A stretch of 64,000 bases of DNA from Selaginella moellendorffii (lineage: Eukaryota; Plantae; Lycopodiophyta), in NCBI RefSeq assembly GCF_000143415.4, contig NW_003314290.1:921586-985585 (forward strand), given 5' to 3'. The translations under genes and the position numbers were made by a program. Below are positions 2,654 to 64,000 of the stretch, piece by piece. Position 1 is the first letter of the stretch. Every line of letters starts with the position of its first letter. Below the pieces are notes generated by a model, which was given only the letters and a program-made list of their open reading frames with translations, was not told the origin of the DNA and ran no database searches.

Positions 2654-3718
2654 TCACGCAAAAAGACTCTCACCAAAGGACTGTACGAGTCCGACGCCTT
2701 GAGTCTTCTTCTCCGCGGCAGTGGCGTTGCCAGCTTCGTCCATCTGAGCGTCCACGACATGCCGCATTTGGCCCAGCTTCTTCTGCGCTAGATTTGAAGC
2801 CGTGTCGAGTGACTTCTCTCCAGCAGACCCCTGTCCAAACACAGACTTGACAGTCCCCAAAACACCGCCACCATGCTGTTCTTGCTGTTGCTGCGGTTGC
2901 TCCTGCTGCTGTTCTCCCTGTTGATTATCTTGCGTCCCTTTGTTCTTCTCCTTCCCTGCCAACTTGGCGCCAACCTTGAAATAACCCAGCGGACTCTTTT
3001 TTCTCTTTTGAGGCTGGTGAGGAGGATGGGGTTGATGCCCGTGAGCTGCCCTGTGCTCGTTTAATAGGTGCTGCTTAGGATGGTGGCTCGATCCTTCTGC
3101 CTCGTCGGACCAGTCCTCCTCTTCCATTTCACTGAAATCACTAAAGTCTGGAATATGATGCTGCTGATTTTTCTCGTTTACATCCGAGTGCTCTTGTTGT
3201 CTAGAATTCGAGTGCTCTTGCTGATGTCTTTCAGACTCCCCTGCGCCACCATGGTGGATCTTCTCAGCAACCTTGTGAGCTGCGTCGTGAAATGCCTTTT
3301 CGTCCTTGGCCAGCCTCTTCACTCCTTCCAACACATCCTTGCTTTCCTGCTGGACCACCTTGCTAACCGTGTGCTTGGCCTGATCTAGCATTTCTTTAGC
3401 TTCCTCCTGTACCGCGGGCTTCTTTCCCTCCAACTTTTCCGTCTTTTCCTTGGCGGTTGAGAAATACGGAGCTAGCTTCCCCTGTCCTTTGCCAACAATC
3501 TCACCAGCTTGTTGCTTTAAATCATTGGCCTTGTCTCTCACAGACTTCCCTTTGTTCTGACCATCGTCCTTGACAGCGTTTTTCACATCGTCGGTAGTCT
3601 TCTTGACCTGCTCAGCCCTGCAACGAGTCAAAAGCTTAGAAAACGAGCGGGGGAAGGAGACAGCTTACGGTTTTTCTTTCTCATATTCACCGTATTCATC
3701 ATCGTCGCTCGGAGCCAT
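2654..3718 (-). CDS. Hydrophilic LEA-like protein (group 3/LEA_4-like helical repeats, His/Gln-rich middle), 2 coding exons
   Basis: Exon 1 MAPSDDDEYGEYEKEK splices in frame (cc|gtaag...ttgcag|g) to the long ORF rich in K/E/A/Q (KDKANDLKQQAGE-like, AKEKTEKLE). Confidence 0.6.
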
Positions 3719-12679: not shown

Positions 12680-14566
12680 ATGTGGCAGCGCGCCTCTAGA
12701 TCTAGATCACGCCGTGGCTTCTTCTCTCCATCGCTTCTCAAGGATGAGCTCGCCGACGAGGCCAGCGCCATCGCCAGGGAGCTCGAGGCCTGCGCGGCCG
12801 AGCGCGATCTCTCCCGCGGCAGGGATTTGCACTCGCAGATCATCGATCGCCACGGCAGGAGCACGCTCCTCGCCAATCTCCTCGTCCACATGTACCACAA
12901 GTGCTCCAGCATCGAGGAGGCGCGATCGGCATTCGATTCCATGGCGGCGCCGCGCAACGTCTTCTCCTGGAACATCATCATCGCGGGGTATGCCCAGGCC
13001 GGGGATCTGGACGAGGCCAAGAACCTGTTCGATCGATCGGCGACGCGAAATATCGTCACCTGGACGACGATCTTCCAGGCGTTCGTGCGATCCCGGCGCT
13101 GCGGCGACGCGATCGCGGTGTTCTTGCGGATGCCGTGCCACAACGCCGTGGCGTGGACGTCGGTGGTGGCGCTCTACGCCGGTGGCGGCGAGTTCTCCCT
13201 CGCCAAGGTCATGTTTGATTCCTCGCCCGAGCGGGAGCTAGTGATCTGGAACGCGATGATCACTGGCTTTGGCCAGGCCAGATTCGCTCGAGAATCCAAG
13301 GAGTTCTTCGATCGAATGCCGCAGCGCGATCTCATCTCGCTCAACGGGATCCTCCACGCCTACGGCCAGTCAGGGCAATCCACCGCCGCCAAGGATCTCT
13401 TCGACGCCATGCCCGATCGCAACGTGGTGTCCTGGACGGAGATGATCCTGATGCACGCGCAGTGCGGCGATCCCAGCGCCGCGCAGGAGGCCTTCGATCG
13501 AATGCCGCGAAGAACCCTAGTCTCCTGGAACGTGATGTTCCACTGCCACGCGCTGGGTGGCGAGCAATCGGGCATGATCCAGGCGCGATCACACGCACGG
13601 CAGCTCGCGGCGACGAAGCAGCTCTTCGAATCCATGCCTGAGCGCGACGAGGTGTCGTGGAACAGCATGATCCAGTGCTGCGTGGAGAGATCCCAGCTCG
13701 AGCTCGCGCGGGCGCTCTTCTCGCGGATGCCCCGGAGGGATCTACCGTCGTGCACGGCGATCATCCAGGCCAGCGCCGAGGCTGGAGACTTGGATCAAGC
13801 GATCGCGATGGCGGAATCCATGCCGGTGCAAGACATCGTCGCGGAGACCGCGATCTTCTCAGCATATGCCCGGTTTGGGCATCTCGATCGCGCAAAGTCA
13901 CTCTTCGATCGAATCCCCGGGAAGGATGTCGTCGCCTGGAACACGCTCATCGCATCGCACGCTCAGAATAACAGCCCCCAGATTGCCGCTTCGATCCTCT
14001 CCAAGATGCCGCTATGGGATCTAGTCTCTTGGAACGCTGCCGTCGCAGCAAATGCCCAGAACGGGCATCTTGCCGACGCGAAGGAGATTTTCGATGCTAT
14101 GCCCGCTCGCAACCTCCTCTCCTGGAACGCGCTGCTCTCCGGAATCGGGCAGAACGGGCACGGCGATCGCGCGCCGGATCTCTTCTTCGCGATGCTGCTC
14201 GATGGCGTGATCCCAGACAGCGTCGCGTTCTTGAGCGTGCTCAATGGCTTCAGCCACGGTGGGCAGCTGGAGATGGGCTGCCAGTGCCTGGGCGCGATGA
14301 GGGCGGAATATGGCGTGGATCCGGCGCCCGAGCACTGGAGCTGTGTCGCGGACATGCTGGGGCGAGCGGGATTGCTGAGCCAGGCGGAGGAGATCATCGA
14401 GGCAATGCCGGGATCGCCAGACTCGGTTGTGTGGAGAGCTCTTCTCAGTGCTTGCAGCGTTCACAGAGATGTTGCTCGCGGGGCGAGAACCGCGGAGATG
14501 GATTCCAGGGCGAGCGATGGCGGCGCTCATATCTTAATGTCTAACATCTACATGGATAACGTCTAG
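12680..14566 (+). CDS. PLS-class pentatricopeptide repeat protein with E extension (no DYW)
   Basis: Repeated FDxMPxRxxVSWNxMI motifs; HWSCVADMLGRAG..PDSVVWRALLSACSVH E-domain; ends at ILMSNIY. Intronless. Confidence 0.93.
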   Translation: MWQRASRSRSRRGFFSPSLLKDELADEASAIARELEACAAERDLSRGRDLHSQIIDRHGRSTLLANLLVHMYHKCSSIEEARSAFDSMAAPRNVFSWNIIIAGYAQAGDLDEAKNLFDRSATRNIVTWTTIFQAFVRSRRCGDAIAVFLRMPCHNAVAWTSVVALYAGGGEFSLAKVMFDSSPERELVIWNAMITGFGQARFARESKEFFDRMPQRDLISLNGILHAYGQSGQSTAAKDLFDAMPDRNVVSWTEMILMHAQCGDPSAAQEAFDRMPRRTLVSWNVMFHCHALGGEQSGMIQARSHARQLAATKQLFESMPERDEVSWNSMIQCCVERSQLELARALFSRMPRRDLPSCTAIIQASAEAGDLDQAIAMAESMPVQDIVAETAIFSAYARFGHLDRAKSLFDRIPGKDVVAWNTLIASHAQNNSPQIAASILSKMPLWDLVSWNAAVAANAQNGHLADAKEIFDAMPARNLLSWNALLSGIGQNGHGDRAPDLFFAMLLDGVIPDSVAFLSVLNGFSHGGQLEMGCQCLGAMRAEYGVDPAPEHWSCVADMLGRAGLLSQAEEIIEAMPGSPDSVVWRALLSACSVHRDVARGARTAEMDSRASDGGAHILMSNIYMDNV

Positions 14567-14711
14567 AGGTTAACGAAGCATCAAAGTGAGTATATTCTGT
14601 TTTTCGAATTCACAAGTTCCCGCGAGTATCAAAACTGAGCTAGAAGAAATGCTTTACACATGAGCCATCGATCTTCCGAGCTATCTAGATCTCGATCTAC
14701 GGTCATCCATC

Positions 14712-15656
14712 CTAGAATTCCTGGGTATTGGGCGATGGTGGAGGTACCACCACATAGCGCTGTGGAGTAGCGAGATTGCCCCCATTTCGCGGTGGAAACT
14801 GCGAGATCTTGGGCGGAGGAGGGAGCGGAGTCGTGTGAGCGACGCCCATGACCGGCAAAGCTTTCTCGTCATCGCACTCGCACCGGAACCCCTGGATGAA
14901 TTCGGCCCACACATCCTCCGTCTTGGGGTAGTAATCGTCGTGGAAAGGATTGGTCCGGCCATCCCTCGCGAATCCAAAGTCGAGCACGAACACCTGGAGC
15001 CGCGGCGATCCCCAGCGTCGCCCGACCACGTACTGGACATCGTTGCAGCTGAGATCCATGCGCCGCGCGGCTCCGACCAGCCTGCCCATGTCCCTGGCCA
15101 CCGCCGGGACGTCCAGGCCCAGGCACTCGCTCGCCTCTCGTGCTAGAACACACGGCGCCTTGAAGAAGATATCCGGCGGCGGAAGAACGAAGAGGCCGAG
15201 CTGGAGCTTCCACACCCGATTCGACTGGAGGAGCTCCGCCCAGCGCGGATCGTCCGGGTAGTAGCGCGCCTTGAGCGCCTCCAGCTCGCAACGCTCCGGC
15301 CCGAAGATCCTTTCCATGGCGATGATGCCGTCGCAGAAGGGCCGCTGCTCCGTGTGGCTGCGAAGCCAATCGCGTTCCTTGGCGCCGCCAACCAGGCTGT
15401 AGAGGACAAGATCCTTGCCGCTGCGAAGCACCGCGTAGGGCATCGGGACGCCGACGGCCTTGAGATCCATGTCGAACACTGCCTGGTGGAGCCGCTGCGC
15501 CGTCTCGGCCTCCTCCTTGAGCTCCTCGTAGGGAATGCGCTTGGCGCCCGGCTTGACGCCATCGCCGTGAAGGAGCTTGAGCGCGACACCGGCGCCGCCA
15601 TCGTAGACAATGCCGAAATCGCCACGCCCTAGGCGCTGGAGCTCCGCGTCCGCCAT
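14712..15656 (-). CDS. Atypical protein-kinase-like protein resembling the DUF3669 family
   Basis: GxGxxG loop (LGRGDFGIVY), VALK, alphaC Glu (LKEEAE), hinge IAMERI, NDVQYVVG, VLDFG, FHDDYYPK, VWAEF. Intronless and GC-rich. First ATG at 15656. Confidence 0.7.
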   Translation of the reverse strand: MADAELQRLGRGDFGIVYDGGAGVALKLLHGDGVKPGAKRIPYEELKEEAETAQRLHQAVFDMDLKAVGVPMPYAVLRSGKDLVLYSLVGGAKERDWLRSHTEQRPFCDGIIAMERIFGPERCELEALKARYYPDDPRWAELLQSNRVWKLQLGLFVLPPPDIFFKAPCVLAREASECLGLDVPAVARDMGRLVGAARRMDLSCNDVQYVVGRRWGSPRLQVFVLDFGFARDGRTNPFHDDYYPKTEDVWAEFIQGFRCECDDEKALPVMGVAHTTPLPPPPKISQFPPRNGGNLATPQRYVVVPPPSPNTQEF

Positions 15657-15790
15657 AGCCAGACCAAAGAAGCACAAGAAACACAAAAACACACAAGAGC
15701 CCTAGAGAAGCTTATGTGATGCTTGCGTGGAAAGGTCACTCCACGTGGCAGGCAAGCATAAAACTGCGTGGTGAAAGCGTTTGCCCTAGA

Positions 15791-16979
15791 ATGGCGATGG
15801 AGCTAGAGTTGAGGCCAGAGCAGCGAGAATGGTGCCGCCAAGCGTCTCTTCTTCTCAAGAACAAGTCCTCCCACCAGGCGAAGAGCGAATATCGTAAGTT
15901 TTCCCTTGATTTTATGGATCGATCGATCGATCAATCCTTTTTTTCTTTCTCAGAGGAGCTCGTCACTCTCCAGGCGCAAGAACTTCTCCATTCCTCCGCG
16001 GCAGATCACCCTCACTGCCGCAGCGCCACCAGAGTTGTGCTGCAAGGCAGCTCCCCCTCTTTCATCAACGCGAATTTCATCACTTCCAATGCCATTTGCG
16101 GCGGGCAGCCGGATTCACCTCTCCATTTCTGGGAGATGGTAGTGCAATGCAACTGTCGCGCGATCGTCAAGCTCACGGAGGTGGGTCAGTGAATAGTTTT
16201 CGATCGAGAGCAAAGATTATAGTTTCTTTTCTCTCGAGATCGAGAAGTTCTTGTTCTAGACTCTATAGACTTACACGATCTGTGGCAGGACTTGGCTGGC
16301 GAATACTTTCCACTGAGGCCGGGAGAATCACAAGTCTATGGTAGGATCAAGATCATCAACCGGAGCTCCTCGCGCAGCATTAACGACGTTACGAGGCGGC
16401 TTCTCCAAGTGGAGTGCGATGATCAAAGCTTCACGCTCGAGCACTGGCAGTACTCGTGGTCCGACTTTGGTGTTCCCAAAAGAATAGAACCGATCCAGGA
16501 AATGTTCGCTGCTCTCTACAAGCTCCCGCCGGGCTGCTCCTACTTCATCCACTGCAGGTTTGTTCTTGTTTTCTCGACTAGTTTGTCTAAGACCTTGGGG
16601 TTTGCTTCACAGGGCTGGGATTGGCCGCGCTGGAACATTTGTCACACTCGATCACGTACTGAGAAGCATTCTCAGCGGTGATCTTAGCGTGGTAAACATC
16701 TCACACACAGTGGCTCGGCTTCGACAGCAGCGGCGTGGATTGGTGGAGACGGATGTAAGTCTCTCATCTACTTTTATTCCTGTTACTTAGAGAGAGCTAT
16801 TTGTTTTAGATTTGCTTAGAGATTTAAAGTTTGCTCGTTTCTTAAGATTAAGTTTTTCGCAGGAGCAATACTGGTTTTGTTTCCGGGCAGTCATCAAGAT
16901 CCTCGAGTTCCTCATGTTTTCAGCGCAACCAAAGACGGAGGTGAAATTCTTCGCTGGCACGAGACAAGTCGAGGTGTAA
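15791..16979 (+). CDS. Classical-fold protein tyrosine phosphatase (divergent), about 5 exons
   Basis: FINANFI, FWEMVVQ..IVKLT, EYFP, WSDFGVP (WPD loop), spliced HCR|AGIGRAGTF (CX5R), LRQQRRGLVETD|EQYWF. Confidence 0.88.
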
Positions 16980-17571
16980 CAAATCAATTATGTAAATTAC
17001 TGCGGATGATAAAAAAAAAAATTAAAAAAATCTGACTTTAAGGTAAAATGTAAGGTAATGCATATTTCTAACAAGTGATAAGCTAGGCCCATGAACAATG
17101 ACTTACATGTGTCAAATTAAAAAGCATTACTTTAATTTGATTTAGGTTAATATTAAAGAAGTGTTTGATTGTTCAAGAAAGAAACAGATGTGCTTGGGAT
17201 CCGATCAAGGCGGATTTTTGGAGTTGTAAAGGTGGTAAAACTTAATCTGTATCAAATTAGGGCATCTTCCAGTATCAAATCGAGCCCCCGAAAAGCGAGG
17301 CCCGCGTAGACTTTCTTGATTCGCACCCCCGCATGTTCCGGGGGGCGATGGCAACGTAAAGACGAAAGATGAGAAAAGAAAGATCCCTATAATGCTGTCC
17401 AGCAGAGTGCGCTGGGCTTCACTGTAAAATCCCCGTTGTTGCATGCGAGGGCGTGGCGTGGTGCTGGCCAAGAGGACTTTGTTTCTGATTTGACTCGATT
17501 AACTCGAGACTATCAGCCTCGTGATCTCGTGCGCGTGATTTCTCCCCGAGAGAGCTAGAGGACTCGTGACG

Positions 17572-19963: not shown

Positions 19964-20014
19964 ATTCAAAGACAAAGATTTAGAGTTTAAGGTTTAGTGT
20001 TTATAGTTTCTCCC

Positions 20015-20088
20015 ATAGCCGTTCCTCCTAAAACCTTGATTGTCAGGGAGCTGACAGTCATGGAGATTGGGCAGTGATTTTGCTGTAT
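20015..20088 (+). pseudogene. Decayed 5' fragment of the SURF2-like gene
   Basis: Aligns by eye to about 23340-23418 with ATG>ATA and many CG>TG/CA changes. Confidence 0.8.
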
Positions 20089-20297
20089 AAGGTTCAAATT
20101 AATAGAAGTTAACTTCAACTAATTTGCAATAGTTTATGAAAACGGAATCGTTTTCAAGAAAAATAATTAATAAATTAATTACTTTCTCTTATCTATAAAT
20201 TCATATATATTTAAATTCTCACAACCCAATAATTTGCCTATACGCCCATATATCTAAATCTAACATTGACATTCACAAAACATAAAATCAATACCTA

Positions 20298-20422
20298 AAA
20301 ATTGATCATAAGAACCACTTTACAAAACTATATCATATCAAAACTGATCATAAAAGCCACTTTATATATTTATATCATATCAAAATTGATCATAAAAACC
20401 ACTTTATATATCTATATCATAT
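20298..20422. repeat. 42-bp tandem repeat x3
   Basis: tgatcata recurs at 20303, 20345 and 20387 with shared aaccacttta..tatatcatatc. Confidence 0.85.
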
Positions 20423-21769
20423 TGTTTTTAAGATCTAATATGAAGGCAAAGATGAAAAAGACTTTGAAAAAAGAGTTAAAAAGTTCTTGAAATTGTTGGG
20501 AAAGAAGAAAATAAATGCTTAGCATTGTGTATTATAAATTTGTTACCACTTAATATAAATTGGATGATAATGGTATTATAATGTCAAGTAATAAGGAATT
20601 TTTTTTAATACTTGATTTACATGTCATTTTCCTTATTCTACAACCCTTTTTTCAAAATTTAATTGGTAAACTCTCAAGGAAATAATATATTAATACTAAT
20701 TTAGCATTTAATGGATCACTTATTGAGAATCTAATTGAAACTATTATAATGCTATTACTTGCTTCTTTAATGATGAAAATGAATTGGCTAAAGTAGAATG
20801 AAAAATTTAATTGCTTATAATCATGTGGTAATTAAAGTTTTATAGATTTAGATATTTAATATCTTGAAAAAATCTCACTTATAGCTCTTCATCCACCTTG
20901 GGATATTTACCCCCAAATGTGATTTCAAGACCACATCAGCTTCACACTTAGTTTAAGTGCTTCACATGTTTAATCTCACTTCTGACATTTAAAGGTACCA
21001 CCAATATCTTAGTCTATTATGTTAAAGTTATATCTATTTATTTTTATTTAATTGGTAGTCCAAAACCACCCATAACACAATCTTGTCTCTCCAAGACTGA
21101 GCCATCCATTCATGAGTGGTTATTTCATGATCATACCTTAGCATTTTTAAAATACTTTAAAACATAAGGAACACCATCCTGTAATATTCCTCCTTTAATC
21201 CCCACTAAATCCTTTTCCATCCATGGTAATGTTTGCTAACACTACCATTGGTCTAAGGCCTAAAAATTTATTTACTAAACCCCACTAACCTTTGGGACTT
21301 CTTCACCACATGACTATACTTTTGGTCACTAAATAAGAAATATATTCTCTTTCTTTCTATGGTCTGGGACTCTATGATGATATTTTAAAACACTATAGTG
21401 TAATGTGAGTTTTATGAGTACTCTTCCCACTTTCCATTACTAAAGTGCCCCAACCATGTGGCTAGAGTGAAGTTTTGATAATTTACACAATAGATAATGC
21501 CCCTTACACTTGGATTGAGAGTATTGACCATCTAATTTTTTAAAGAAGTTAAAATTAGCTTTGAAACACTTTATTAAGTTATCCCCCTTATTCATCCATA
21601 TTCACTCTAACTTTGGACTACTCAATAATTATATCATCACTTGTAGCTTTCCTTGGTTACATTAGCTTTTGCTAGCCAAATTAGTTTTATTAGAGTCCTC
21701 CCCTCTACTATCTCATAAGGATTATTAAACCCTTTAGGGTTTGGGAAACAATCACTTTTGGCTTTCACT

Positions 21770-22150
21770 CTCAGAGTTGGATTTTAACTTTAGACTTTAG
21801 TTTGAACTTAGACTCAAATTCATATTTGGACTTAGTTTTAGCCCTGGTCTTGGTTTTGATTTTGGTCTTAGTCTAGGTCACGGTCTTGATCTCAATCTCA
21901 GTCTTAGACCCAATCTTAGACTTCTTCTCAGACTCTATCTTGGACTCCATCTCAAATTCCTTTTCGAACTTTATTTTAGACTCTTTCTCAGACTCCACTT
22001 TTGACTCTTTATTGAACTCCATTTCAGACTCCATCTCAAACTCCTTTTCAGATTCTTTCTCAGACTTTTTTTCAATTTTTTTCTCGGACTCTATTTTTGA
22101 CTCTTTATCAGATTCCATTTTAGACTCTTCAAACTTCGTTTTGGGCTCAG
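21770..22150. repeat. Degenerate 12-bp (6-bp subunit) tandem array
   Basis: Periodic agactc/ttttca units; translate as (ESEK/ESKI)n on the minus strand. Confidence 0.75.
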
Positions 22151-46321: not shown

Positions 46322-47681
46322 TCACAGTTGATAGCTTCCATGAGTTCCGAGCTCGCAAGCGTTGCAAGAAGCTAGCAGCCATTCCTTGAGTTTGTGTCCC
46401 CGGCCGAGCATTCTCCCCTTGTTCTCCCTGTCAATCTTGAGAGGACTCTTGGCGCTCCTCAGGCATCTCAGCACGGCATTCTTCACCTCGGAGCTTCCCT
46501 CCACTTTGCTGTGCTTTCCCCATCCCGTGACCACCTCGATCTCCCTGGGAACTCTAGCACCCGATCCAAACTTCCGCTTTGCCTCGTCGAGCCAGCACAG
46601 AAGTGTGAGATACGCTGCCCCGGGTGTCAAGCTGTGCATGTCCAGCTTCCACACCTCCGCCGACCAATCCACCGATCCAAGCGGGAGATTCATCGTCACT
46701 AGCTTCCTGACCAGCTCCAGTTCTTCGTCCGAGCCATCCAGTCTAGAGAGCAAATCCGCGGCGCCGAGGAGTGACTCCGGCTCTTGAGCATCACCAGTAA
46801 GCTGGGCTAGCACCGGGCAAGCGTTGCTGACTGCGTTCCAGGAGAGAACTGTCAATCCAATCCTGGCCTCCTCCATCATCTCCATCACCTCTAGCATCTC
46901 CCTATACTTCCTGTGAGTCCCATACGCTGCGAGCATCGTGTTGAAAGTGGCTGCATCCAGCTTGTGCCCAGCCTTGAGCATGGCTTCCAAGACCTCGTCA
47001 ACTTTGCCGTAGATGGCAGCCCTTCCAAACGAGACGAGCAACGACTTGTAACTCCGGGAGGAGACCCTTTCCCCGCTAGCTTTGATCGAGTTGAGTGTTT
47101 CCTCCGCCTTAAATGGATCGCCAAACTTTGCCTGGGCTTGGAACAGCGCTCTCCGCCCAGCTGCTGCGGCTGCTCTGCCCAATCCCTCTAGCTCTCCAAA
47201 CTCCCTGTGAGCTCTCTCCCACAACCCATACCTCGCGTAGAACTCCAGGAGCGCGCAGCGGAACTTCACTCTCTCGGATTCCCCCAGCTCGTCATCAAAT
47301 CCCGCGACAAACGCATCCGCCTCCACCGTCTCCCGCGCCTTAGCCATCAACGCCGCAATGTGGCCATGGATTCGCACATTCCTCGCCTCCGCATGGTACA
47401 CCTGACCAAAATCCACGATTCACGCCCGAAATCTCACCAAGAACACTCACAGCAAGCGCGATCTCGAGCTCCTCCTTCTCGACCAGCTGCTCCAGCACCT
47501 TGCCCCTGAGATTCCGGCTAAGCTTGCTCCATCGCCGCGCAATGCTGCCGCTCCCGGCGCCGCGCTCCCTGGCGAGGCAGAGATCTCGCACCGCCTTGTG
47601 CGCGGAGCCCCAGCCGGGGACGCGCACGCCGGCATCCTCTCGCCACGACGATAAAACCACATAAACCCTACCTCCATCCAT
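46322..47681 (-). CDS. P-class PPR protein with C-terminal SMR domain, 2 exons
   Basis: PPR motifs (SYKSLLVSFGR, TFNTMLAAYG); SMR motifs LDMHSLT..VVTGWGKHS..NKGR. Confidence 0.88.
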
Positions 47682-47752: not shown

Positions 47753-49459
47753 TTAGCTCGAACCATGGGAGCTCGAGTCTGGCGATGATTCCAGCGCTGA
47801 GTCTTTGACACTCGCAAGCAATCGTCTCAAACGATCCTGCCTGGAGGCTCTCTCTGGAGAAAAGATGATCCCACTCCAAGCGCTAGCAGCCAGATCATCA
47901 CTTGGATCATCCCGCGACCCCGCAAAGAGCTCAAGAATGCTGCCCGCGTTCTCGTTGATCCCGGCCAGCTTCTTCACGGATTGGAACGCTGCCGGATCCA
48001 CCAACAGCTTGCTGCAGCGGCTGAGATCGTCCTTCCAGCCGATAAGTTCCGCTGGCTCCCCGACTTTGTTGGTCGTGTAGATCTTCGCGTTGTCCACCAG
48101 CTCGCAGTACTTCTCCAATGATCCTGCGAAGAGTTTGTGTGATCGCAGCTGGCCTTTGATCGGAACCGCTCTCTTGGTGATTATAGCACGGCGGATGCCC
48201 CGTTCCACGGCTAGAACCGGCTCACAAGTCACTCCCACCAATTCGATCCTGTATGGTCTCCTGTTTTTTCGAGCGAACTTCTCGCTACTGGCATTGCCAA
48301 GTTCTCGCTTTTCCGGATCAAGTTCTCGTTCCTGTTCTTCGAAGTTCTTGAGTTCCTGTCCCTGATCTTGTTTTTCTCCCTGTTCTTCCTCCTCTGGATC
48401 AACCGGAACCCAGTACTCCTCGACCACAGTTCCATCCTCGGACTTCACATATCCTGGTCCCATCCTGTATCTCCGGTTGTGAACATCTCTGGCCATGGCG
48501 ATAGTCTGCGCTACAAACGGCTCCCAACTCATCGTCCCGTCGAAGATCACGTCCCTACCATCGTTGAGCGCCGAGACGAGCAGCGACGACGCCGCCATCG
48601 TCGAGGAGCTGTGGACGAGCTCGGAAGCCATGGCGATATCACCACCATCGCCACGGTCCGACGAACTTATCGTTCTATACACCACGTCCGTCTCTTTGAA
48701 AGCATCGGCTTCCACCACCACCGTGTCCTGGACCACGCCCGACCAGAAAGAACCAGCGAGGATCTCTTTCACCACCGTGCTCTTCCCGGCTCCCATTCCA
48801 CCCCCGATGAACAGAAGAACCGGGCTCCGGTGCTTTGATTCCGCTGGAACCACAACCTCGCCTTCCCTGGGAACTCTCGAATCCTTGGAGATCGATCCCA
48901 TCGCCTTGAGCGTCTCGAGCAGCGTCGAGATCGTCCTCTTGGCCCTGAGCCCGGCCATGATCTTCTGGAACCTCTCCTTCCTGGTCGCGGCCAGGACGGC
49001 GTGCCGGAGCGAATTCCTCCTCATCCCAGGGCGGCTATGGCCGTCGCGGACCTGATCCAGGAGCTGCGAGGGGTGGTGCCAGTGGAAGGCGAAGTAGGAG
49101 ATCATGCAAGCGTCCAGCTCCCGGACGATCTCGCGATGCAAGTCCAGCATCACCGCCTCGTCGTCTGGATCGGCGCCAACCTTGCTGAGGAAGACGAGGA
49201 TTCCTTCCAGGCTGTGATCTGAGCTGCTCTTGTCCCCGGCGAGGTAATCCATCGCGACCTCGGCCAGGCGCCGAGCAATGGCGCTCCCCTTGCGCAGCCC
49301 GAGCTGCCGCGCGACGTAATCCCCGAAGAGCTCCATAGATTTGACGATCCCGGAGCTGTTGAATGCGATCTCTGCGGCCAAGCTCTCATACCTGTGCGTG
49401 ATCTTGTGGCTCCTCCAGTGGCTGTGGTGCTCCATCGCGTGGAAAATCCCTCCCAGCAT
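47753..49459 (-). CDS. Calmodulin/Ca2+-dependent NAD kinase (NADKc, zeta-toxin-like P-loop)
   Basis: YVARQLG, YFAFHW, SPVLLFIGGGMGAGKST, VEADAFKETD, DVIFDGTMSW, YRMGPGY, YRIELVGV, QLRSHKLF. The N-terminus may extend into an upstream exon. Confidence 0.88.
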   Translation of the reverse strand: MLGGIFHAMEHHSHWRSHKITHRYESLAAEIAFNSSGIVKSMELFGDYVARQLGLRKGSAIARRLAEVAMDYLAGDKSSSDHSLEGILVFLSKVGADPDDEAVMLDLHREIVRELDACMISYFAFHWHHPSQLLDQVRDGHSRPGMRRNSLRHAVLAATRKERFQKIMAGLRAKRTISTLLETLKAMGSISKDSRVPREGEVVVPAESKHRSPVLLFIGGGMGAGKSTVVKEILAGSFWSGVVQDTVVVEADAFKETDVVYRTISSSDRGDGGDIAMASELVHSSSTMAASSLLVSALNDGRDVIFDGTMSWEPFVAQTIAMARDVHNRRYRMGPGYVKSEDGTVVEEYWVPVDPEEEEQGEKQDQGQELKNFEEQERELDPEKRELGNASSEKFARKNRRPYRIELVGVTCEPVLAVERGIRRAIITKRAVPIKGQLRSHKLFAGSLEKYCELVDNAKIYTTNKVGEPAELIGWKDDLSRCSKLLVDPAAFQSVKKLAGINENAGSILELFAGSRDDPSDDLAASAWSGIIFSPERASRQDRLRRLLASVKDSALESSPDSSSHGSS

Positions 49460-51097: not shown

Positions 51098-52654
51098 TCA
51101 CGAAAGCTCCAGCCGCGGCCTCACACTGACGCGCAGCGGCACAGTCCGGAAGCAAGCCAGACCCGTCGTCTCGGACATGTCGATCTCGGACACATCCACC
51201 CCCGGCGGCGGCCTCCACTCGAATCTGTGCAAGAGATAGGCCAGCGTGAGGCTGACATGAAGCAGCGCCAGGTTGATCCCCGCGCACCTCCTCCGCCCGG
51301 ACGAGAACGGGATGAGCTCAAAGTGCTGGCCTAGCAAGTTGTGGCAGCTGCCGAGGAACCGCTCCGGCCGGAACTCGTGCGCTCTCTCCCACGAGCTCGG
51401 GTCCCGGCAGATCGCCCAGATGTTTACGTGGAGCGTCGAGTTGGCCGGGATGGTGTAGCCGGCCAGCGAAACCGGGCATGAGTTGAAGTGTGGGAGGCCC
51501 AGAGGCGCGGCCGGGTGGAGCCGCATTATCTCCTTGACGAGCGCCTGGATGTACGGCAGGCCCGAGAGGTCCGACTCCTGAACGTATCGCTCACGGCCCA
51601 CGACCCGGTCGAGCTCTTCCTGTGCTCGCCGCTGGACTTCCGGGTGGCGGACCAGCTCCGAGAAGCCCCACTCGAGCGTGGATCTCGTCGTGCCGGTGCC
51701 GGCAAGGAGCATGTCCTGGAAAGCCAATCTTTAGAACTAAACTTTCCTTTCTGGAGCGCTTTTGTCTACCTGGATAATTGCCACAATCTCATCGTTGGAA
51801 AGGCTCTTTTGATCGTTGAGTGCCACCATTACGTCCACGAAGTCTCTCGGCTTGTCGCGCCTGAGCTGCTTGCGGCGCTCCTCGATGACGGAATTCAGAA
51901 GGCCTTGCAACGCGGGGATGATTGTTTTTCTTATCCTCTGGTCCTTGCCTCGCAGCCGATCCAGCCAGTGCAGTGCTGGGATGTAGTCCCCGAGGTAGAT
52001 CTTGCCGCTCTCCTGTGTGAGCATGCCCCAAGTTGCACGGTACGCTGCTGCCTCTGCCACAGGAGGCAGGTCGCTGGTGTAGAACTTTTTCCCGAAGAGG
52101 ACGCTGCTCATGAGATTTGTAAGCAGCTCCTGGAAGCAGACGCTGAGGTTCACTTCCTCTCCGGCGGCAGCCCGCATTGCAATGTTGTTGCAAAAGTCAT
52201 GCAGCTCCGCCTTTCTTATCCCCCCGAACATGTTCACCTTGGAAGCTGTGAAAAGCTCCGTGCTGCATATCTTTCTCAGGTTCTTCCATCTGCCGCCATA
52301 AGGCGCGAACACCAAGTCTTTGAAATTCTGGCTGATGTGCTTGAATGGTGTCGAGTAGCGAGGCCGACTGGCGAACTGCACATCGTGTTCCCGGAACACC
52401 GCCCTGGCCACCTCCGGACTGCTGATCACTACCGTCGCCCTGCTTCCCATGTTGAGATAAACAATCGGTCCATACTTGGTGGCAAGCTCTGCGAAGCTGC
52501 GGTGAAGATTGCGCCTGGAGACGCAGAACAAGCACCCCACAATCGGCCATCCCCACGGCCCCGGCGGTAGCTTCTGCCAATGCCTGTAGACATTCCCAAG
52601 ACTTGCTAGGAGAGCACCGGCAGCAGCAACACATAGCCAGCCTATCCAGAACAT
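51098..52654 (-). CDS. Cytochrome P450, A-type (CYP71 clan), 2 exons
   Basis: Membrane anchor, LPPGPWGWP, WKNLRK, EIMR, PERF, heme motif FSSGRRRCAG; single 54-nt intron 51769-51716. Confidence 0.95.
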
Positions 52655-60900: not shown

Positions 60901-63900
60901 CGGCATAGGATCTTTTCTACGAGCTTCAGCAAGATCTGCTATAGAACACATGCATGTGACACGTGTTGCTGTGCCTTCCTCTCTCACTCCATGCAGTTGG
61001 CCACCTCCCATTGGCCGGGAGCAAACCTCAGCATGATTATTTGCTAGGACGTGGTTAAAGAAATAACTTACCCATAGGACAGCTGCAATTGTTTGGATTT
61101 GGCAGCCTAGAAAGTTCAACAACTCCTCCTTATTATTATAGATGATGGTATGGTAATACATTTGTTATAGCATTCATTTTGTCCTAACTAGACAATGGCC
61201 ATATAGAGTCCATACGAACTCAAATATGTATGCTGGTGATTGTCCACTGTCCAATCAGCCCATGGCCAAGCATGGAATACAAGTTAACCATGTTTTAATT
61301 TGCATAAGGTGGAAGGTGTCTTCATACGCTGGCATGGTATAGATTTCTGGTTTTCCACCAGATATGGCACCAATAAACAACAGAAAAAAATTAATTTGCA
61401 GCACGTTGTGGCTCTAAACCAGCTTAAGAGGTAGAGAATGTCAAATTTTGTCACTAATGGCTACCTTAAATATTATTTAGGGTTCTTGGAGAGTTGGGCA
61501 GCTAATAGAACGATGTGAGGAGAGCTCCCACAATGCCAATCTCAGCAGTATATGAGCTGCATTGCCATGATTCCTTCCCCTGTTTGAAAAACCCCTGGGT
61601 CCATTTCAAAAGTGCCCATCATGACTCTGTTTCAAGCATCAAGTTTTGGCAGGAAAGAGGTTTACCAAGTTGAGTAAACTTTGAGAAGAATTCTAAGATG
61701 CATCCACATCCCTCTACCAAAGAGAACCTTATCTTGAACTTGTGCCTCAAGGTAATTGCCATAATGCTCTACTACCTTATGAGTGCTCTCACCCTAGGGC
61801 AATGGGGCAGATAGCCTGTCCAAAAGTTGCATTAGGAAATCTAAAACCTCCAACACCACCATATAACATTTTTTTAGGTCAACATTCCATTGAGAATGAG
61901 CCTCCACTATTTCTCCAAATGTGACAATTGTTCTTTTCTCCATGAAGTGAATATGTAAAAAAGACTTCATTCCATGATAACTAGGGGATGGTCAAAAATT
62001 GAGTTGAGCTCAACTCAAGTCAATGCTAATCAATATAATCAACGATAAGTTTTATAAAGAAATCTCATGTCAGAAAAATGTTATTCATCAGTGAACTTGA
62101 AATTAATGAATTTAATTGTTAATGGTTTAGAGAAATTTATTTATTTTTAATCTATTAACAGAGAGAACTTCTATTTTCTAGTATGAGCTATACAATAAAA
62201 TACCAATTGAGTAGTTTCTAGAATTAGAATTTTGTTCAAACTTATATAATTGCTATTTTTTATATTCACAATATTCTGGTTAAAATGAGCTTTTTTGGGC
62301 CCAAATAAAAATGGGAAGATTGAATTTTGCCATGAACCTGAAAACTTCTATTATACATTTTGACAATTTAACATTTTAACATTTCAAAAATTGATTAGAA
62401 ATATATAAATAATTAAAAACCCTTATTCATTCATTCTCTAGAGTTTTACAAAGATGGAAAGCAAGAAAGATCAGAAATCTGTGAATAGTTTTAACATAAA
62501 GAAATGTAAGAATGTTAATTTTATTTTACTACCACAATCTCTATATTACACTTTTGGTTTTTATTACCCATCCGCAAATATAGAAACCATTATCACTATT
62601 GATAAAAATGTTTCTGTTACTTTCAAAACAATAGTTCAAAATAAGAGAAAAGAAGAAATGAACAACATAGCAAAAAGCATCAATAAATCCACTCCATAGA
62701 ATATTTTATAGTATATTTGTAACTCATTTAAGAAAAGTAAGTTGTTTGTTTATTTCCTATTCTTTTTTGTATAAGTATGATATATTATCATAGTGAATCT
62801 TTGCAAGGAGTAGTTAGTCTTTAGTTTATGGAACCCTAGAGCCACTTACCTCTTTGTAATTAATATGTAGCCCTATTACCGAGACTTATAATTAAGATTC
62901 AGTCTATTACCATATGATAATAAAACCTCAAGATTGAAATGTAGTATGCAAACAATATAATCATCAAAAAATTCTCATTGTTGTGGAGTGAGTAAGGCTT
63001 TTTCTACCTGAACTCGTGTTCTCACCCTTGCCTGCAAAATAGTGATAAACAAACAAAGACAAGAACGTAGAAGAAAAGAAGAAAAGAAAATGAGAATGAG
63101 AAGAGAAAAGAATATAAAATAACTCAGCCTTGAACCCTAAAGGCATAAGAAAGGATAAACATATATCACTCTCTCAACTCTACTTTACACAAACAGTTAT
63201 AGACAAGAGAAAAAATGTTTAATTCAATGCAAATGTATACAATAGTGAGTGGGGGTTGTTTTTCAGCATGTTTAAGTGTTATTTATATACTACATGATTT
63301 TATAACTGTTCCTAACTGCTTCTTGTCTAAGTCGGGTCATTCTTCTTTGCATGCATAAACTTAGGTGTAATTCCATTTTGCCTAAACTTCCTTTTTCTGC
63401 TTTGCCTTGAAAAATATACAAAATAAAACATTTACCTCTTCATCACTCCCCCATGACAAAGGTATTGCATGTCCTCAGATAGTCGACTTCTCCAAATCCT
63501 ACTCCAAACTGTTAAGCTTGGCCTTTATAGTGATAAGCTCGATTCTTCGAATTGCTAGCTCACTTAGCTAATTCGTAATCTTGTGAGCGAAGGCATAGCT
63601 AGTCTTGACTTTGTAGTGCTGTTGTAGCGTCTGCTGCTACTGTGGCTGCTTCATCTTGCTAGATTGATCTACTAAGATTGTGTTATTGTCAGATATATAG
63701 GTGGAGTAGAGAAAAATCCTAGTACTATTTTCTTTTTGTATAGGTAACTCCACAGATATAAGTCTTACTTACATTATGTACCTATAAAATAATCTAAATG
63801 TATTATCACACTTTCTTTGACAATAGTAAAGGTATCAGAAGTCAGACTTCTATATACTTTGAGCAGAATATTATCAAGTATTTCACTCAGTAATTCGTTG

Positions 63901-64000
63901 AATTATTTAAGCAATTTTATTAAATCTATCATTTACTGGCTTAATTAAACACACAAGATAGTTTAATTTTTGCTTTCTTATACTTTTGCTTTGTCACACA
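60900..64000. other. AT-rich, CpG-poor degenerate region (old TE or pseudogene debris, unresolved)
   Basis: No credible ORFs; composition resembles the other decayed segments; some splice-like signals on the minus strand near 63000-63500. Confidence 0.35.

What the first reader, a model, noticed from the sequence alone, without database searches (positions are those of the whole stretch)
14712..15656. Kinase-like ORF resembles the mainly fungal DUF3669 family: possible horizontal acquisition
Seen: an intronless, very GC-rich ORF with GxGxxG, VALK and DFG, but with LSCNDVQYVVG in place of HRDxxxxN and no APE motif. The C-terminal motif order (KLQLG...MGRLVG...NDVQYVVG...VLDF...DDYYPK...VWAEF) parallels my recollection of the DUF3669 consensus (RxYLG...MA..LA..DxxDVEFVL...LDF...DPYYPRP...LW..F). 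The family assignment and HGT are inferences from pattern memory, not from a search.
Basis: partly seen in the sequence, partly recalled or inferred. Interest (0 to 1): 0.78.

Follow-up and report, generated by a model that had tools for sequence, protein, structure and literature searches.

The report
Orphan kinase-like gene in spikemoss
This is a real, transcribed, single-exon gene of the spikemoss Selaginella moellendorffii. Its product carries the main ATP-binding motifs of protein kinases but has no alignable relative in any database searched, so a fungal or giant-virus origin remains an untested lead.

Summary
The ORF exists exactly as described: window 14712-15656, minus strand, 314 aa, intronless, GC 64%, with GRGDFG, VALK and DFG, a shortened catalytic loop and no APE.

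It lies on a 1.9-Mb Selaginella moellendorffii scaffold between plant genes. A syntenic, 98% identical copy sits on the second haplotype. RNA-derived contigs from four studies cover it. Its codon usage matches its neighbours. It is therefore not contamination.

By sequence it is an orphan:
- Pfam, including DUF3669 and Pkinase, NCBIfam and PHROGs gave nothing at E<=10.
- Two word searches found only the protein itself.
- An exhaustive phmmer search of 1.84 billion representatives found only the protein itself.

The DUF3669 idea is supported only by a protein-language-model feature search. That search scored 0.96 and 0.95 to Ascomycota DUF3669 clusters and 0.97 to a giant-virus hypothetical cluster. 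The next named families dropped to 0.87.

Kinase likeness rests on the motifs, a borderline CK1 match (E 0.2) and UniProt's name for the allele. AlphaFold failed twice (pLDDT 33), so the fold is untested.

Horizontal transfer cannot be tested because no alignment or tree is possible. I read it as a lineage-restricted, highly divergent kinase-like protein of unknown origin.

First-stage notes of this scan flag similar ORFs elsewhere in this genome.

The parts
14712..15656 (-). Single-exon CDS of the 314-aa kinase-like protein (P0001). The allele on the second haplotype is P0002 / EFJ30540.1, 318 aa.
15612..15629 (-). Codons 10-15, GRGDFG: a glycine-rich loop of the GxGxxG type.
   Evidence: aligned to the CK1 G-loop (very weak)
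15576..15587 (-). Codons 24-27, VALK: candidate beta-3 lysine K27.
   Evidence: motif-spacing test
15021..15056 (-). Codons 201-212, DLSCNDVQYVVG: degenerate and shortened catalytic-loop equivalent. D206 aligns with the HRD aspartate of CK1. A 3-residue gap falls where CK1 has P-D-N.
   Evidence: E 0.2, borderline
14973..14981 (-). Codons 226-228, DFG.
   Evidence: aligned to the CK1 DFG
14922..14939 (-).
   Evidence: The resemblance to the family was not tested by alignment.
14715..14870 (-). Codons 263-314: proline-rich, low-complexity tail. It holds the 12-nt in-frame indel (inserted behind 14762) and the T297M difference between alleles.
15657..15790 (.). Very short divergent intergenic region. 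It is 62 bp to the annotated ATG of the phosphatase gene at 15719 and 134 bp to the next in-frame ATG at 15791. It is probably a shared bidirectional promoter with overlapping 5' ends.
15719..16979 (+). Head-to-head neighbour: a classical protein-tyrosine phosphatase gene (PF00102) with five exons. Four GT..AG introns are confirmed by RNA contigs: 15894-15953, 16179-16286, 16555-16609 and 16755-16862.
12680..14566 (+). Convergent neighbour: an intronless 628-aa PPR gene. Its stop lies 145 bp from the stop of the kinase-like ORF.

Best explanation
The ORF is a genuine, transcribed, lineage-restricted nuclear gene of Selaginella moellendorffii. It encodes a highly divergent protein with a likely protein-kinase-like fold (inferred). 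It keeps the nucleotide-binding elements: glycine loop GRGDFG, beta-3 lysine K27 in VALK, acidic residues in the predicted helix that follows, and DFG aspartate D226.

Its catalytic loop is shortened. An aspartate (D206) remains, but there is no His-Arg before it and no equivalent of the metal-binding asparagine. There is no APE. About 70 extra residues lie between the hinge and the helix before the catalytic loop. The protein ends in a proline-rich, probably disordered tail.

The most likely mode of action (inferred, not shown) is ATP binding, as an atypical low-activity kinase or a pseudokinase scaffold in the cytosol. It is probably co-expressed with the tyrosine phosphatase gene that starts 62-134 bp away on the other strand.

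In language-model feature space its nearest look-alikes are fungal proteins carrying Pfam DUF3669 and a cluster of giant-virus hypothetical proteins. No sequence alignment supports membership of either group. Its evolutionary origin is open.
For: Gene reality:
- The ORF is intact on both haplotypes, with the same neighbours on each.
- The allelic indel is in frame, 12 nt.
- Codon usage and GC periodicity match the host.
- Contigs from four runs in four studies cover the whole ORF. The same contigs splice the neighbour's four introns, so they come from RNA. Depth is zero in the intergenic DNA beyond 17076.

Kinase likeness:
- The motif trio at kinase-like order and spacing occurred in 0 of 200,000 shuffles.
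- phmmer aligns residues 185-237 to the alpha-E helix, catalytic loop and DFG of CK1/YCK2, E 0.2.
- PADLOC PD-T4-6 matches residues 8-76 at E 0.055. I recall this as a Ser/Thr kinase defence protein.
- UniRef names the allele 'Protein kinase domain-containing protein'.
- With PF12417 excluded, the nearest named families are DUF6206 and YrbL-PhoP_reg. The tool reports that these share a clan. From memory, YrbL-PhoP_reg belongs to the Pfam PKinase clan.

Family lead: atlas feature scores are 0.97 (giant-virus cluster) and 0.96 / 0.95 (DUF3669 clusters), with 205-210 of 256 features shared. Shuffled proteins reach 0.95 about once in 100.

Orphan status.
Against: - No profile recognises the protein: Pfam Pkinase, PK_Tyr_Ser-Thr and DUF3669, NCBIfam and PHROGs all gave nothing.
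- The N-terminal 100 residues alone hit only noise in the PDB. The CK1 and PD-T4-6 matches are at noise level.
- Two AlphaFold runs gave pLDDT 33, so the fold is untested.
- The RNA contigs are unstranded. Coverage could partly come from read-through of the convergent PPR transcript or the divergent phosphatase transcript.
- Allelic pN/pS is 0.3-0.5 on 6-9 substitutions, which is not distinguishable from neutrality. The low divergence of the CDS is shared with the adjacent phosphatase exons, so it is a local trough and not proof of constraint.
- There is no evidence of translation.
Confidence: 0.6

Rival explanations
1. Horizontal acquisition. The gene descends from a fungal DUF3669-type gene or a giant-virus gene that entered a Selaginella ancestor. 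It was then ameliorated to host composition and kept as a single intronless gene.
For: - All 30 best look-alikes in the atlas feature search are either DUF3669 clusters (Ascomycota) or unnamed clusters, and the best of those shown is 88% viral (Nucleocytoviricota). No plant family appears.
- The exhaustive search found no plant relative.
- The gene is intronless, while its phosphatase neighbour has four introns.
- There is precedent in this species. Maumus et al. 2014 (PMC4083422) report an unknown-function family, EFJ10148, with 23 copies in S. moellendorffii. Its only homologues are in a few fungi and one chlorovirus.
- Other notes of this scan flag fungal-type genes in this genome (unchecked).
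Against: - No alignable fungal or viral homologue was found: plus the motif scans, which were checked. No tree can be built.
- The Pfam DUF3669 model does not match.
- GC3 and codon usage are indistinguishable from flanking plant genes.
- There are no flanking repeats or mobile-element remains. The neighbouring PPR gene is intronless too.
- The atlas tool itself warns that taxa of look-alike clusters are no sign of gene transfer.
Confidence: 0.25
2. Vertical origin by runaway divergence. The gene is a retrocopy or old duplicate of a plant eukaryotic protein kinase, for example a casein-kinase-1-like gene, that lost its introns and diverged beyond profile recognition.
For: - The only PDB matches in kinase register are CK1 family members. 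They share features typical of CK1: 'DL..xD' before the catalytic aspartate, a glycine after the loop ('YVVGRR' against 'FLIGRR') and no APE.
- The intronless structure fits retroposition.
Against: - The CK1 match has E 0.2 and covers only 53 residues.
- Pfam Pkinase does not detect the protein at all.
- Canonical kinase families do not appear among the listed feature hits.
- No intermediate paralogue was found in the exhaustive search.
Confidence: 0.12
3. Not a functional protein. The ORF is a young or decaying open frame in GC-rich, pervasively transcribed DNA between two close genes, and the kinase motifs are fortuitous or relics.
For: - Allelic pN/pS is not significantly below 1. Five replacements against three silent changes are seen over three alleles.
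- The RNA evidence is unstranded.
- There is no relative anywhere, and AlphaFold finds no confident fold.
Against: - The coding signal is specific to this frame and matches the host.
- A 326-codon stop-free run has probability 1.8e-5 at the local composition.
- The motif trio was absent from 200,000 shuffles.
- Feature scores of 0.96-0.97 are reached by about 1 in 100 shuffled proteins.
- The indel between alleles is in frame.
Confidence: 0.1

Closest known systems
Fungal proteins annotated with Pfam PF12417 (DUF3669), about 330-350 aa, mainly Ascomycota
   Same: They are the nearest named neighbours in language-model feature space, scoring 0.96 and 0.95 with 205-206 of 256 shared features. 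Their length is similar.
   Different: The PF12417 model does not match the protein, even at E<=10. phmmer against 1.84 billion representatives finds no such protein. PF12417 is itself a loose model. It spans fungal proteins and the vertebrate KRAB zinc-finger domain (PMC6923878), which a 2025 preprint derives from LINE-1 ORF1p. The label therefore says little about function.
Casein kinase 1 family (for example yeast/Candida YCK2, PDB 6u69)
   Same: Residues 185-237 align colinearly with the alpha-E helix, catalytic loop and DFG. D206 falls on the catalytic aspartate and D226 on the DFG aspartate. The G-loop aligns as well, and both lack APE.
   Different: The match has E 0.2 only. A 3-residue deletion removes the K-x-x-N part of the catalytic loop. 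There is no HRD. There are about 70 extra residues before the alpha-E helix. Pfam Pkinase gives no hit.
Bacterial atypical kinase-like families DUF6206 (PF19709) and YrbL-PhoP_reg (PF10707)
   Same: They are the next-best named families by features once DUF3669 is excluded, at 0.87 and 0.85. They are small single-domain proteins of 200-325 aa.
   Different: The scores are below 0.9, which the tool calls a lead only. Only 114-127 of 256 features are shared. There is no sequence match.
S. moellendorffii EFJ10148 family (Maumus et al. 2014, PMC4083422)
   Same: Same species. The function is unknown. Its relatives are confined to a few fungi and a giant virus, the same taxa as the look-alikes of this ORF.
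   Different: No relation has been shown. The exhaustive search found no other Selaginella protein at E<=0.001. The paper's alignment file is not held. EFJ10148 has 23 copies, whereas this gene is a single locus.

Membership tests
Eukaryotic protein kinase / protein-kinase-like superfamily | Glycine-rich loop GxGxxG followed by the beta-3 lysine (VAxK) | tested here: met
   GRGDFG at aa 10-15 and VALK at aa 24-27. The pair at this spacing occurred in 17 of 200,000 shuffles.
Eukaryotic protein kinase / protein-kinase-like superfamily | Catalytic loop HRDxKxxN with catalytic Asp and metal-binding Asn | tested here: not met
   The sequence is DLSCNDVQYVVG. In the CK1 alignment D206 falls on the catalytic Asp, but His and Arg are absent and a 3-residue gap removes the Asn position.
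Eukaryotic protein kinase / protein-kinase-like superfamily | DFG motif about 18-20 residues after the catalytic Asp | tested here: met
   DFG lies at aa 226-228, 20 residues after D206.
Eukaryotic protein kinase / protein-kinase-like superfamily | APE motif / canonical activation segment | tested here: not met
   There is no APE in the sequence.
Eukaryotic protein kinase / protein-kinase-like superfamily | Significant match to a kinase profile (Pfam PF00069 / PF07714 or another PKinase-clan model) | tested here: not met
   No Pfam family matched at E<=10. The best PDB hit is CK1 at E 0.2. PADLOC PD-T4-6 scores E 0.055. The UniRef name of the allele suggests a PROSITE profile hit, but I did not reproduce that here.
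Eukaryotic protein kinase / protein-kinase-like superfamily | Bilobal kinase fold | tested here: inconclusive
   AlphaFold2 gave pLDDT 32.9 and 33.3, so no fold search was meaningful. The order of secondary-structure elements in the poor models is compatible with a kinase N-lobe, but confidence is too low for that to count.
Pfam DUF3669 (PF12417) | Match to the PF12417 profile at its gathering score | tested here: not met
   There was no match even at E<=10, for the whole protein and for residues 120-259 alone.
Pfam DUF3669 (PF12417) | Alignable similarity to full-length fungal DUF3669-bearing proteins | tested here: not met
   phmmer against 1.84 billion representatives and two word searches found only the protein itself. 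Hits scoring below about 40 bits would not be reported at this database size, so distant kinship is not excluded.
Pfam DUF3669 (PF12417) | Nearest neighbours by language-model features carry the family | tested here: met
   Ten of the 30 best hits carry PF12417, at 0.96 and 0.95. The next named family scores 0.87. This is a lead, not an alignment.
Horizontally transferred gene | Phylogeny nesting the plant gene inside a donor clade, with absence from other plants | not testable with these tools
   There are no homologues to align. No plant genomes or other lycophyte data could be searched.
Horizontally transferred gene | Resident in host DNA (not contamination) | tested here: met
   The flanks hold PPR, PTP, TCP, AP2 and Dof genes. 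Both haplotypes are syntenic over more than 11 kb at about 97% identity.
Horizontally transferred gene | Atypical composition relative to host genes | tested here: not met
   GC3 is 0.79, against 0.80 for the PPR gene and 0.78 for the Dof gene. The codon-usage score lies within the range of neighbouring genes.

The most novel reading that the evidence does not exclude
Selaginella domesticated an atypical kinase of the fungal DUF3669 / giant-virus type, which is absent from other land plants. It sits on a shared bidirectional promoter with a classical tyrosine phosphatase, forming a lineage-specific phospho-signalling pair. The gene would also be a very divergent relative of the fungal/chlorovirus-like EFJ10148 family, or of the other 'DUF3669-like' ORFs noted in this genome.
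Probability: 0.18. Interest if true: 0.6.

Novelty: new member of a known kind. Interest (0 to 1): 0.35.

Why it matters
If the kinase-like fold and the link to fungal DUF3669 proteins and giant-virus proteins hold, three things follow.
- The fungal half of the heterogeneous Pfam family DUF3669 would get a structural and functional reading as an atypical kinase.
- Selaginella, a lineage already suspected of taking up fungal and giant-virus genes, would gain one more case of a microbial or viral gene in a land plant.
- The gene and its head-to-head tyrosine phosphatase would form a compact pair for experiments.

As it stands, this is an expressed orphan with suggestive motifs. It is useful as a target for structure prediction with better alignments, but not yet a surprising result.

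Tried and rejected
1. Pfam at E<=1 and E<=10, on the whole protein and on residues 120-259, gave nothing. NCBIfam and PHROGs gave nothing. PADLOC gave only marginal hits: PD-T4-6 at E 0.055 and Cas6f at E 0.066, the latter noise.

2. The word search on the full protein, the word search on residues 1-265 at E<=10, and the exhaustive phmmer search found only the protein itself.

3. The search for related loci in viral contigs found no relative.

4. I wrote degenerate DNA patterns for DV[EQ][FY]V ... LDF ... D.YYP.
- In viral contigs the scans gave 0, 43, 0 and 1 hits. One of these scans was wasted on an out-of-frame gap that I mistyped.
- In metagenome contigs they gave 0 and 6 hits.
- Every hit was a chance match on translation or tblastn.

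5. AlphaFold2 on the full protein and on residues 1-265 with both alleles gave pLDDT 33. I therefore ran no fold search, because a low-confidence model gives meaningless matches.

6. A PDB search with the N-terminal 100 residues alone returned only noise: a Fab chain and proteasome subunits.

7. The five other long ORFs overlapping the locus in other frames have no Pfam hit, so the ORF is not the shadow of another gene.

8. No terminal or inverted repeats flank the gene that would mark a mobile element.

9. The window holds no paralogue.

10. Purifying selection between haplotypes could not be shown. There are too few substitutions, and the divergence trough extends into the neighbouring gene.

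11. The EFJ10148 alignment in the supplement of Maumus et al. is not held. No literature was found on fungal DUF3669 proteins as kinases or on this locus tag.

Its family comes from the precomputed annotation and from exon 1 alone.

Full report
**What is there**

Window 14712-15656 (minus strand) is an uninterrupted ORF of 314 codons, from the first ATG to a TAG.
- GRGDFG at aa 10-15
- VALK at aa 24-27
- LSCNDVQYVVG at aa 202-212
- VLDFG at aa 224-228
- DDYYPK at aa 240-245
- VWAEF at aa 249-253

There is no HRD and no APE. The last 52 residues are proline-rich.

GC is 64.4%, with GC1/2/3 of 0.70/0.44/0.79. A codon-usage model trained on the plant genes of the window scores this frame at 0.22 bits per codon. 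The other five frames score 0.006 or less, and the neighbouring genes score 0.14-0.35. A stop-free run of this length has probability 1.8e-5 at the local composition.

**Where it is**

The exact protein is encoded once, on the 1.89-Mb scaffold GL377594.1 of Selaginella moellendorffii assembly GCA_000143415.2. The window also carries AP2, TCP, Dof, PPR, RING and IQ-type genes.

A 98% identical, 318-aa allele is encoded on scaffold GL377575.1 (EFJ30540.1, SELMODRAFT_409516, UniRef D8RBQ0). It has the same neighbours in the same order: bicarbonate/boron-type transporter, tyrosine phosphatase, this gene, PPR, NmrA-like, TCP. The two haplotypes align at about 97% over more than 11 kb.

Contamination or misassembly is therefore excluded. 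No repeats flank the gene.

**Expression**

Contigs from four public runs in four studies were laid on 13800-17300. In every run the contigs skip introns of the neighbouring phosphatase gene. Three runs show all four GT..AG introns and the fourth shows three of them, so the contigs derive from RNA. Depth is zero beyond 17076.

The same data cover the whole ORF without any joint, so the locus is transcribed and unspliced. One run carries a further allele. It has the 12-nt in-frame insertion of haplotype 2 plus R213Q, V249L, R258Q and one silent change.

Two caveats apply. The contigs are unstranded. They also run on into both neighbours: the PPR stop is 145 bp away and the phosphatase start is 62-134 bp away. 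A sense mRNA is therefore likely but not proven.

**Selection**

The two haplotypes differ at 6 of 945 CDS positions: pS 0.011 and pN 0.005, a ratio of 0.44. For the PPR gene, pS is 0.050 and the ratio is 0.22.

The low divergence extends into phosphatase exons 1-2, which show 0 differences. It is a local trough and not proof of constraint. Over three alleles there are five replacements and three silent changes. Constraint is undecided.

**Relatives**

No relative was found by any sequence-based route.
- Pfam gives no family at E<=10, for the whole protein or its C-terminal half. That includes DUF3669 and every kinase model.
- NCBIfam and PHROGs give nothing.
- Two word searches of 5.8 billion clusters and an exhaustive phmmer search of 1.84 billion representatives return only the protein itself.
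- At that database size, hits below roughly 40 bits go unreported. Very distant kin are therefore not excluded, but there is no plant, fungal or viral homologue by ordinary criteria.
- Motif-based DNA scans of viral and metagenome contigs gave only chance hits.

**Evidence on the family**

- The best hit, at 0.97 with 210 of 256 shared features, is an unnamed 51-member cluster that is 88% viral (Nucleocytoviricota).
- Next come Ascomycota clusters in which 93% and 71% of members carry PF12417 DUF3669, at 0.96 and 0.95.
- Ten of the 30 best hits carry PF12417, and the other 20 are unnamed.
- The tool states that shuffled proteins reach 0.95 about once in 100.
- With PF12417 excluded, the best named families are DUF6206 (0.87) and YrbL-PhoP_reg (0.85), with far fewer shared features. 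The tool reports that they share a clan, and from memory YrbL-PhoP_reg belongs to Pfam's PKinase clan.

The DUF3669 proximity is therefore specific, and the wider neighbourhood is made of atypical kinase-like proteins.

The literature describes PF12417 as a loose model spanning fungal proteins and a vertebrate KRAB zinc-finger domain (PMC6923878). A preprint derives the vertebrate domain from LINE-1 ORF1p. The label itself therefore carries no function.

**Evidence on the fold**

- phmmer against the PDB aligns residues 185-237 with the alpha-E helix, catalytic loop and DFG of CK1/YCK2, at E 0.2. D206 falls on the catalytic aspartate and D226 on the DFG aspartate. A 3-residue gap falls where CK1 has P-D-N.
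- The N-terminal 100 residues alone hit only noise.
- PADLOC's PD-T4-6 matches residues 8-76 at E 0.055. I recall this as a Ser/Thr kinase defence protein.
- UniRef names the allele 'Protein kinase domain-containing protein'. This is presumably a PROSITE profile hit, which is my inference.
- The ordered motif trio never occurred in 200,000 shuffles. This test is post hoc.
- AlphaFold2 failed twice, with pLDDT 33, so no structural comparison was possible.

I put the probability of a kinase-like fold at about 0.75. I put specific kinship with the fungal DUF3669-bearing proteins at about 0.55.

**Mechanism (inferred)**

The nucleotide-binding half of the kinase machinery is kept: the G-loop, K27, acidic residues in the predicted following helix, and D226. 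The phosphotransfer half is degenerate: there is no His-Arg, no Asn and no APE.

This pattern fits an ATP-binding atypical kinase with unusual catalytic geometry, or a pseudokinase. There is no signal peptide or membrane segment, so it is probably cytosolic. The proline-rich tail is the most variable part. The divergent arrangement with a classical tyrosine phosphatase gene suggests co-regulation, but nothing shows a functional pairing.

**Origin**

Horizontal transfer is a live but untested idea.

For it:
- The look-alikes are fungal and giant-virus clusters, and none is from plants.
- The gene is intronless.
- There is precedent in this species. The 23-copy EFJ10148 family has homologues only in a few fungi and one chlorovirus (PMC4083422).
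- First-stage notes of this scan flag four or five more 'DUF3669-like' ORFs on other scaffolds, and other fungal-type genes in this genome. These notes are unchecked and I could not reach those ORFs with my tools.

Against it:
- Nothing can be aligned.
- Composition matches the host.
- The intronless PPR neighbour shows that lack of introns is not unusual here.

I rate transfer at about 0.25, runaway divergence of a plant kinase at about 0.12, and a non-functional ORF at about 0.10.

**Verdict**

This is a real, expressed, lineage-restricted gene for a probable atypical kinase-like protein. It has a non-alignment-based affinity to fungal DUF3669 proteins and giant-virus proteins. The family assignment and the transfer hypothesis are leads, not results.

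Noticed in passing
window 15719-16979 (+): A classical protein-tyrosine phosphatase gene (PF00102, 309 aa, five exons) lies head to head with the kinase-like ORF. Its annotated ATG is only 62 bp from the ORF's ATG, and the next in-frame ATG is 134 bp away. Read across the exon 3/4 junction, the active-site signature is HCRAGIGRAG, with Arg where classical PTPs usually have Ser. RNA contigs in one run bridge both genes.
   Followed up: partly
window about 14900-16290 compared with L002: There is a local trough of divergence between the two haplotypes. Phosphatase exons 1-2 show 0 differences and the kinase-like CDS shows 0.6%. The PPR CDS, introns and intergenic DNA around them show 2-4%. The PPR gene's pS is 0.05. 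This could be coalescent variation, gene conversion or a sweep.
   Followed up: partly
window 14284-15153 in run X13 ('organism C'): A third allele of the gene is expressed. It has the 12-nt insertion of haplotype 2 plus R213Q, R258Q (both CpG transitions) and V249L. The run is labelled with a different organism code from most holders.
   Followed up: partly
window 47753-49459 (-): A 568-aa intronless ORF carries a Zeta_toxin / AAA_33 P-loop kinase domain (E 4e-14). It lies next to a short PPR-like ORF at 46322-47416.
   Followed up: no
window 2654-3631 (-) and 51488-52570 (+): Two long ORFs of 325 and 360 aa have no Pfam match. The second overlaps a 308-aa ORF on the opposite strand in GC-rich DNA, so its coding status is unclear.
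   Followed up: no
window 20001-22000 and 62001-64000: Two AT-rich stretches (GC about 0.30) stand out in a window that is otherwise 0.44-0.59 GC. They are probably intergenic or repeat DNA.
   Followed up: no
window 14034-14150: RNA contig depth spikes there, and many contigs run on into unlike sequence at 14046-14133. This is the conserved PPR repeat motif shared with many other PPR transcripts, not a feature of this locus.
   Followed up: no
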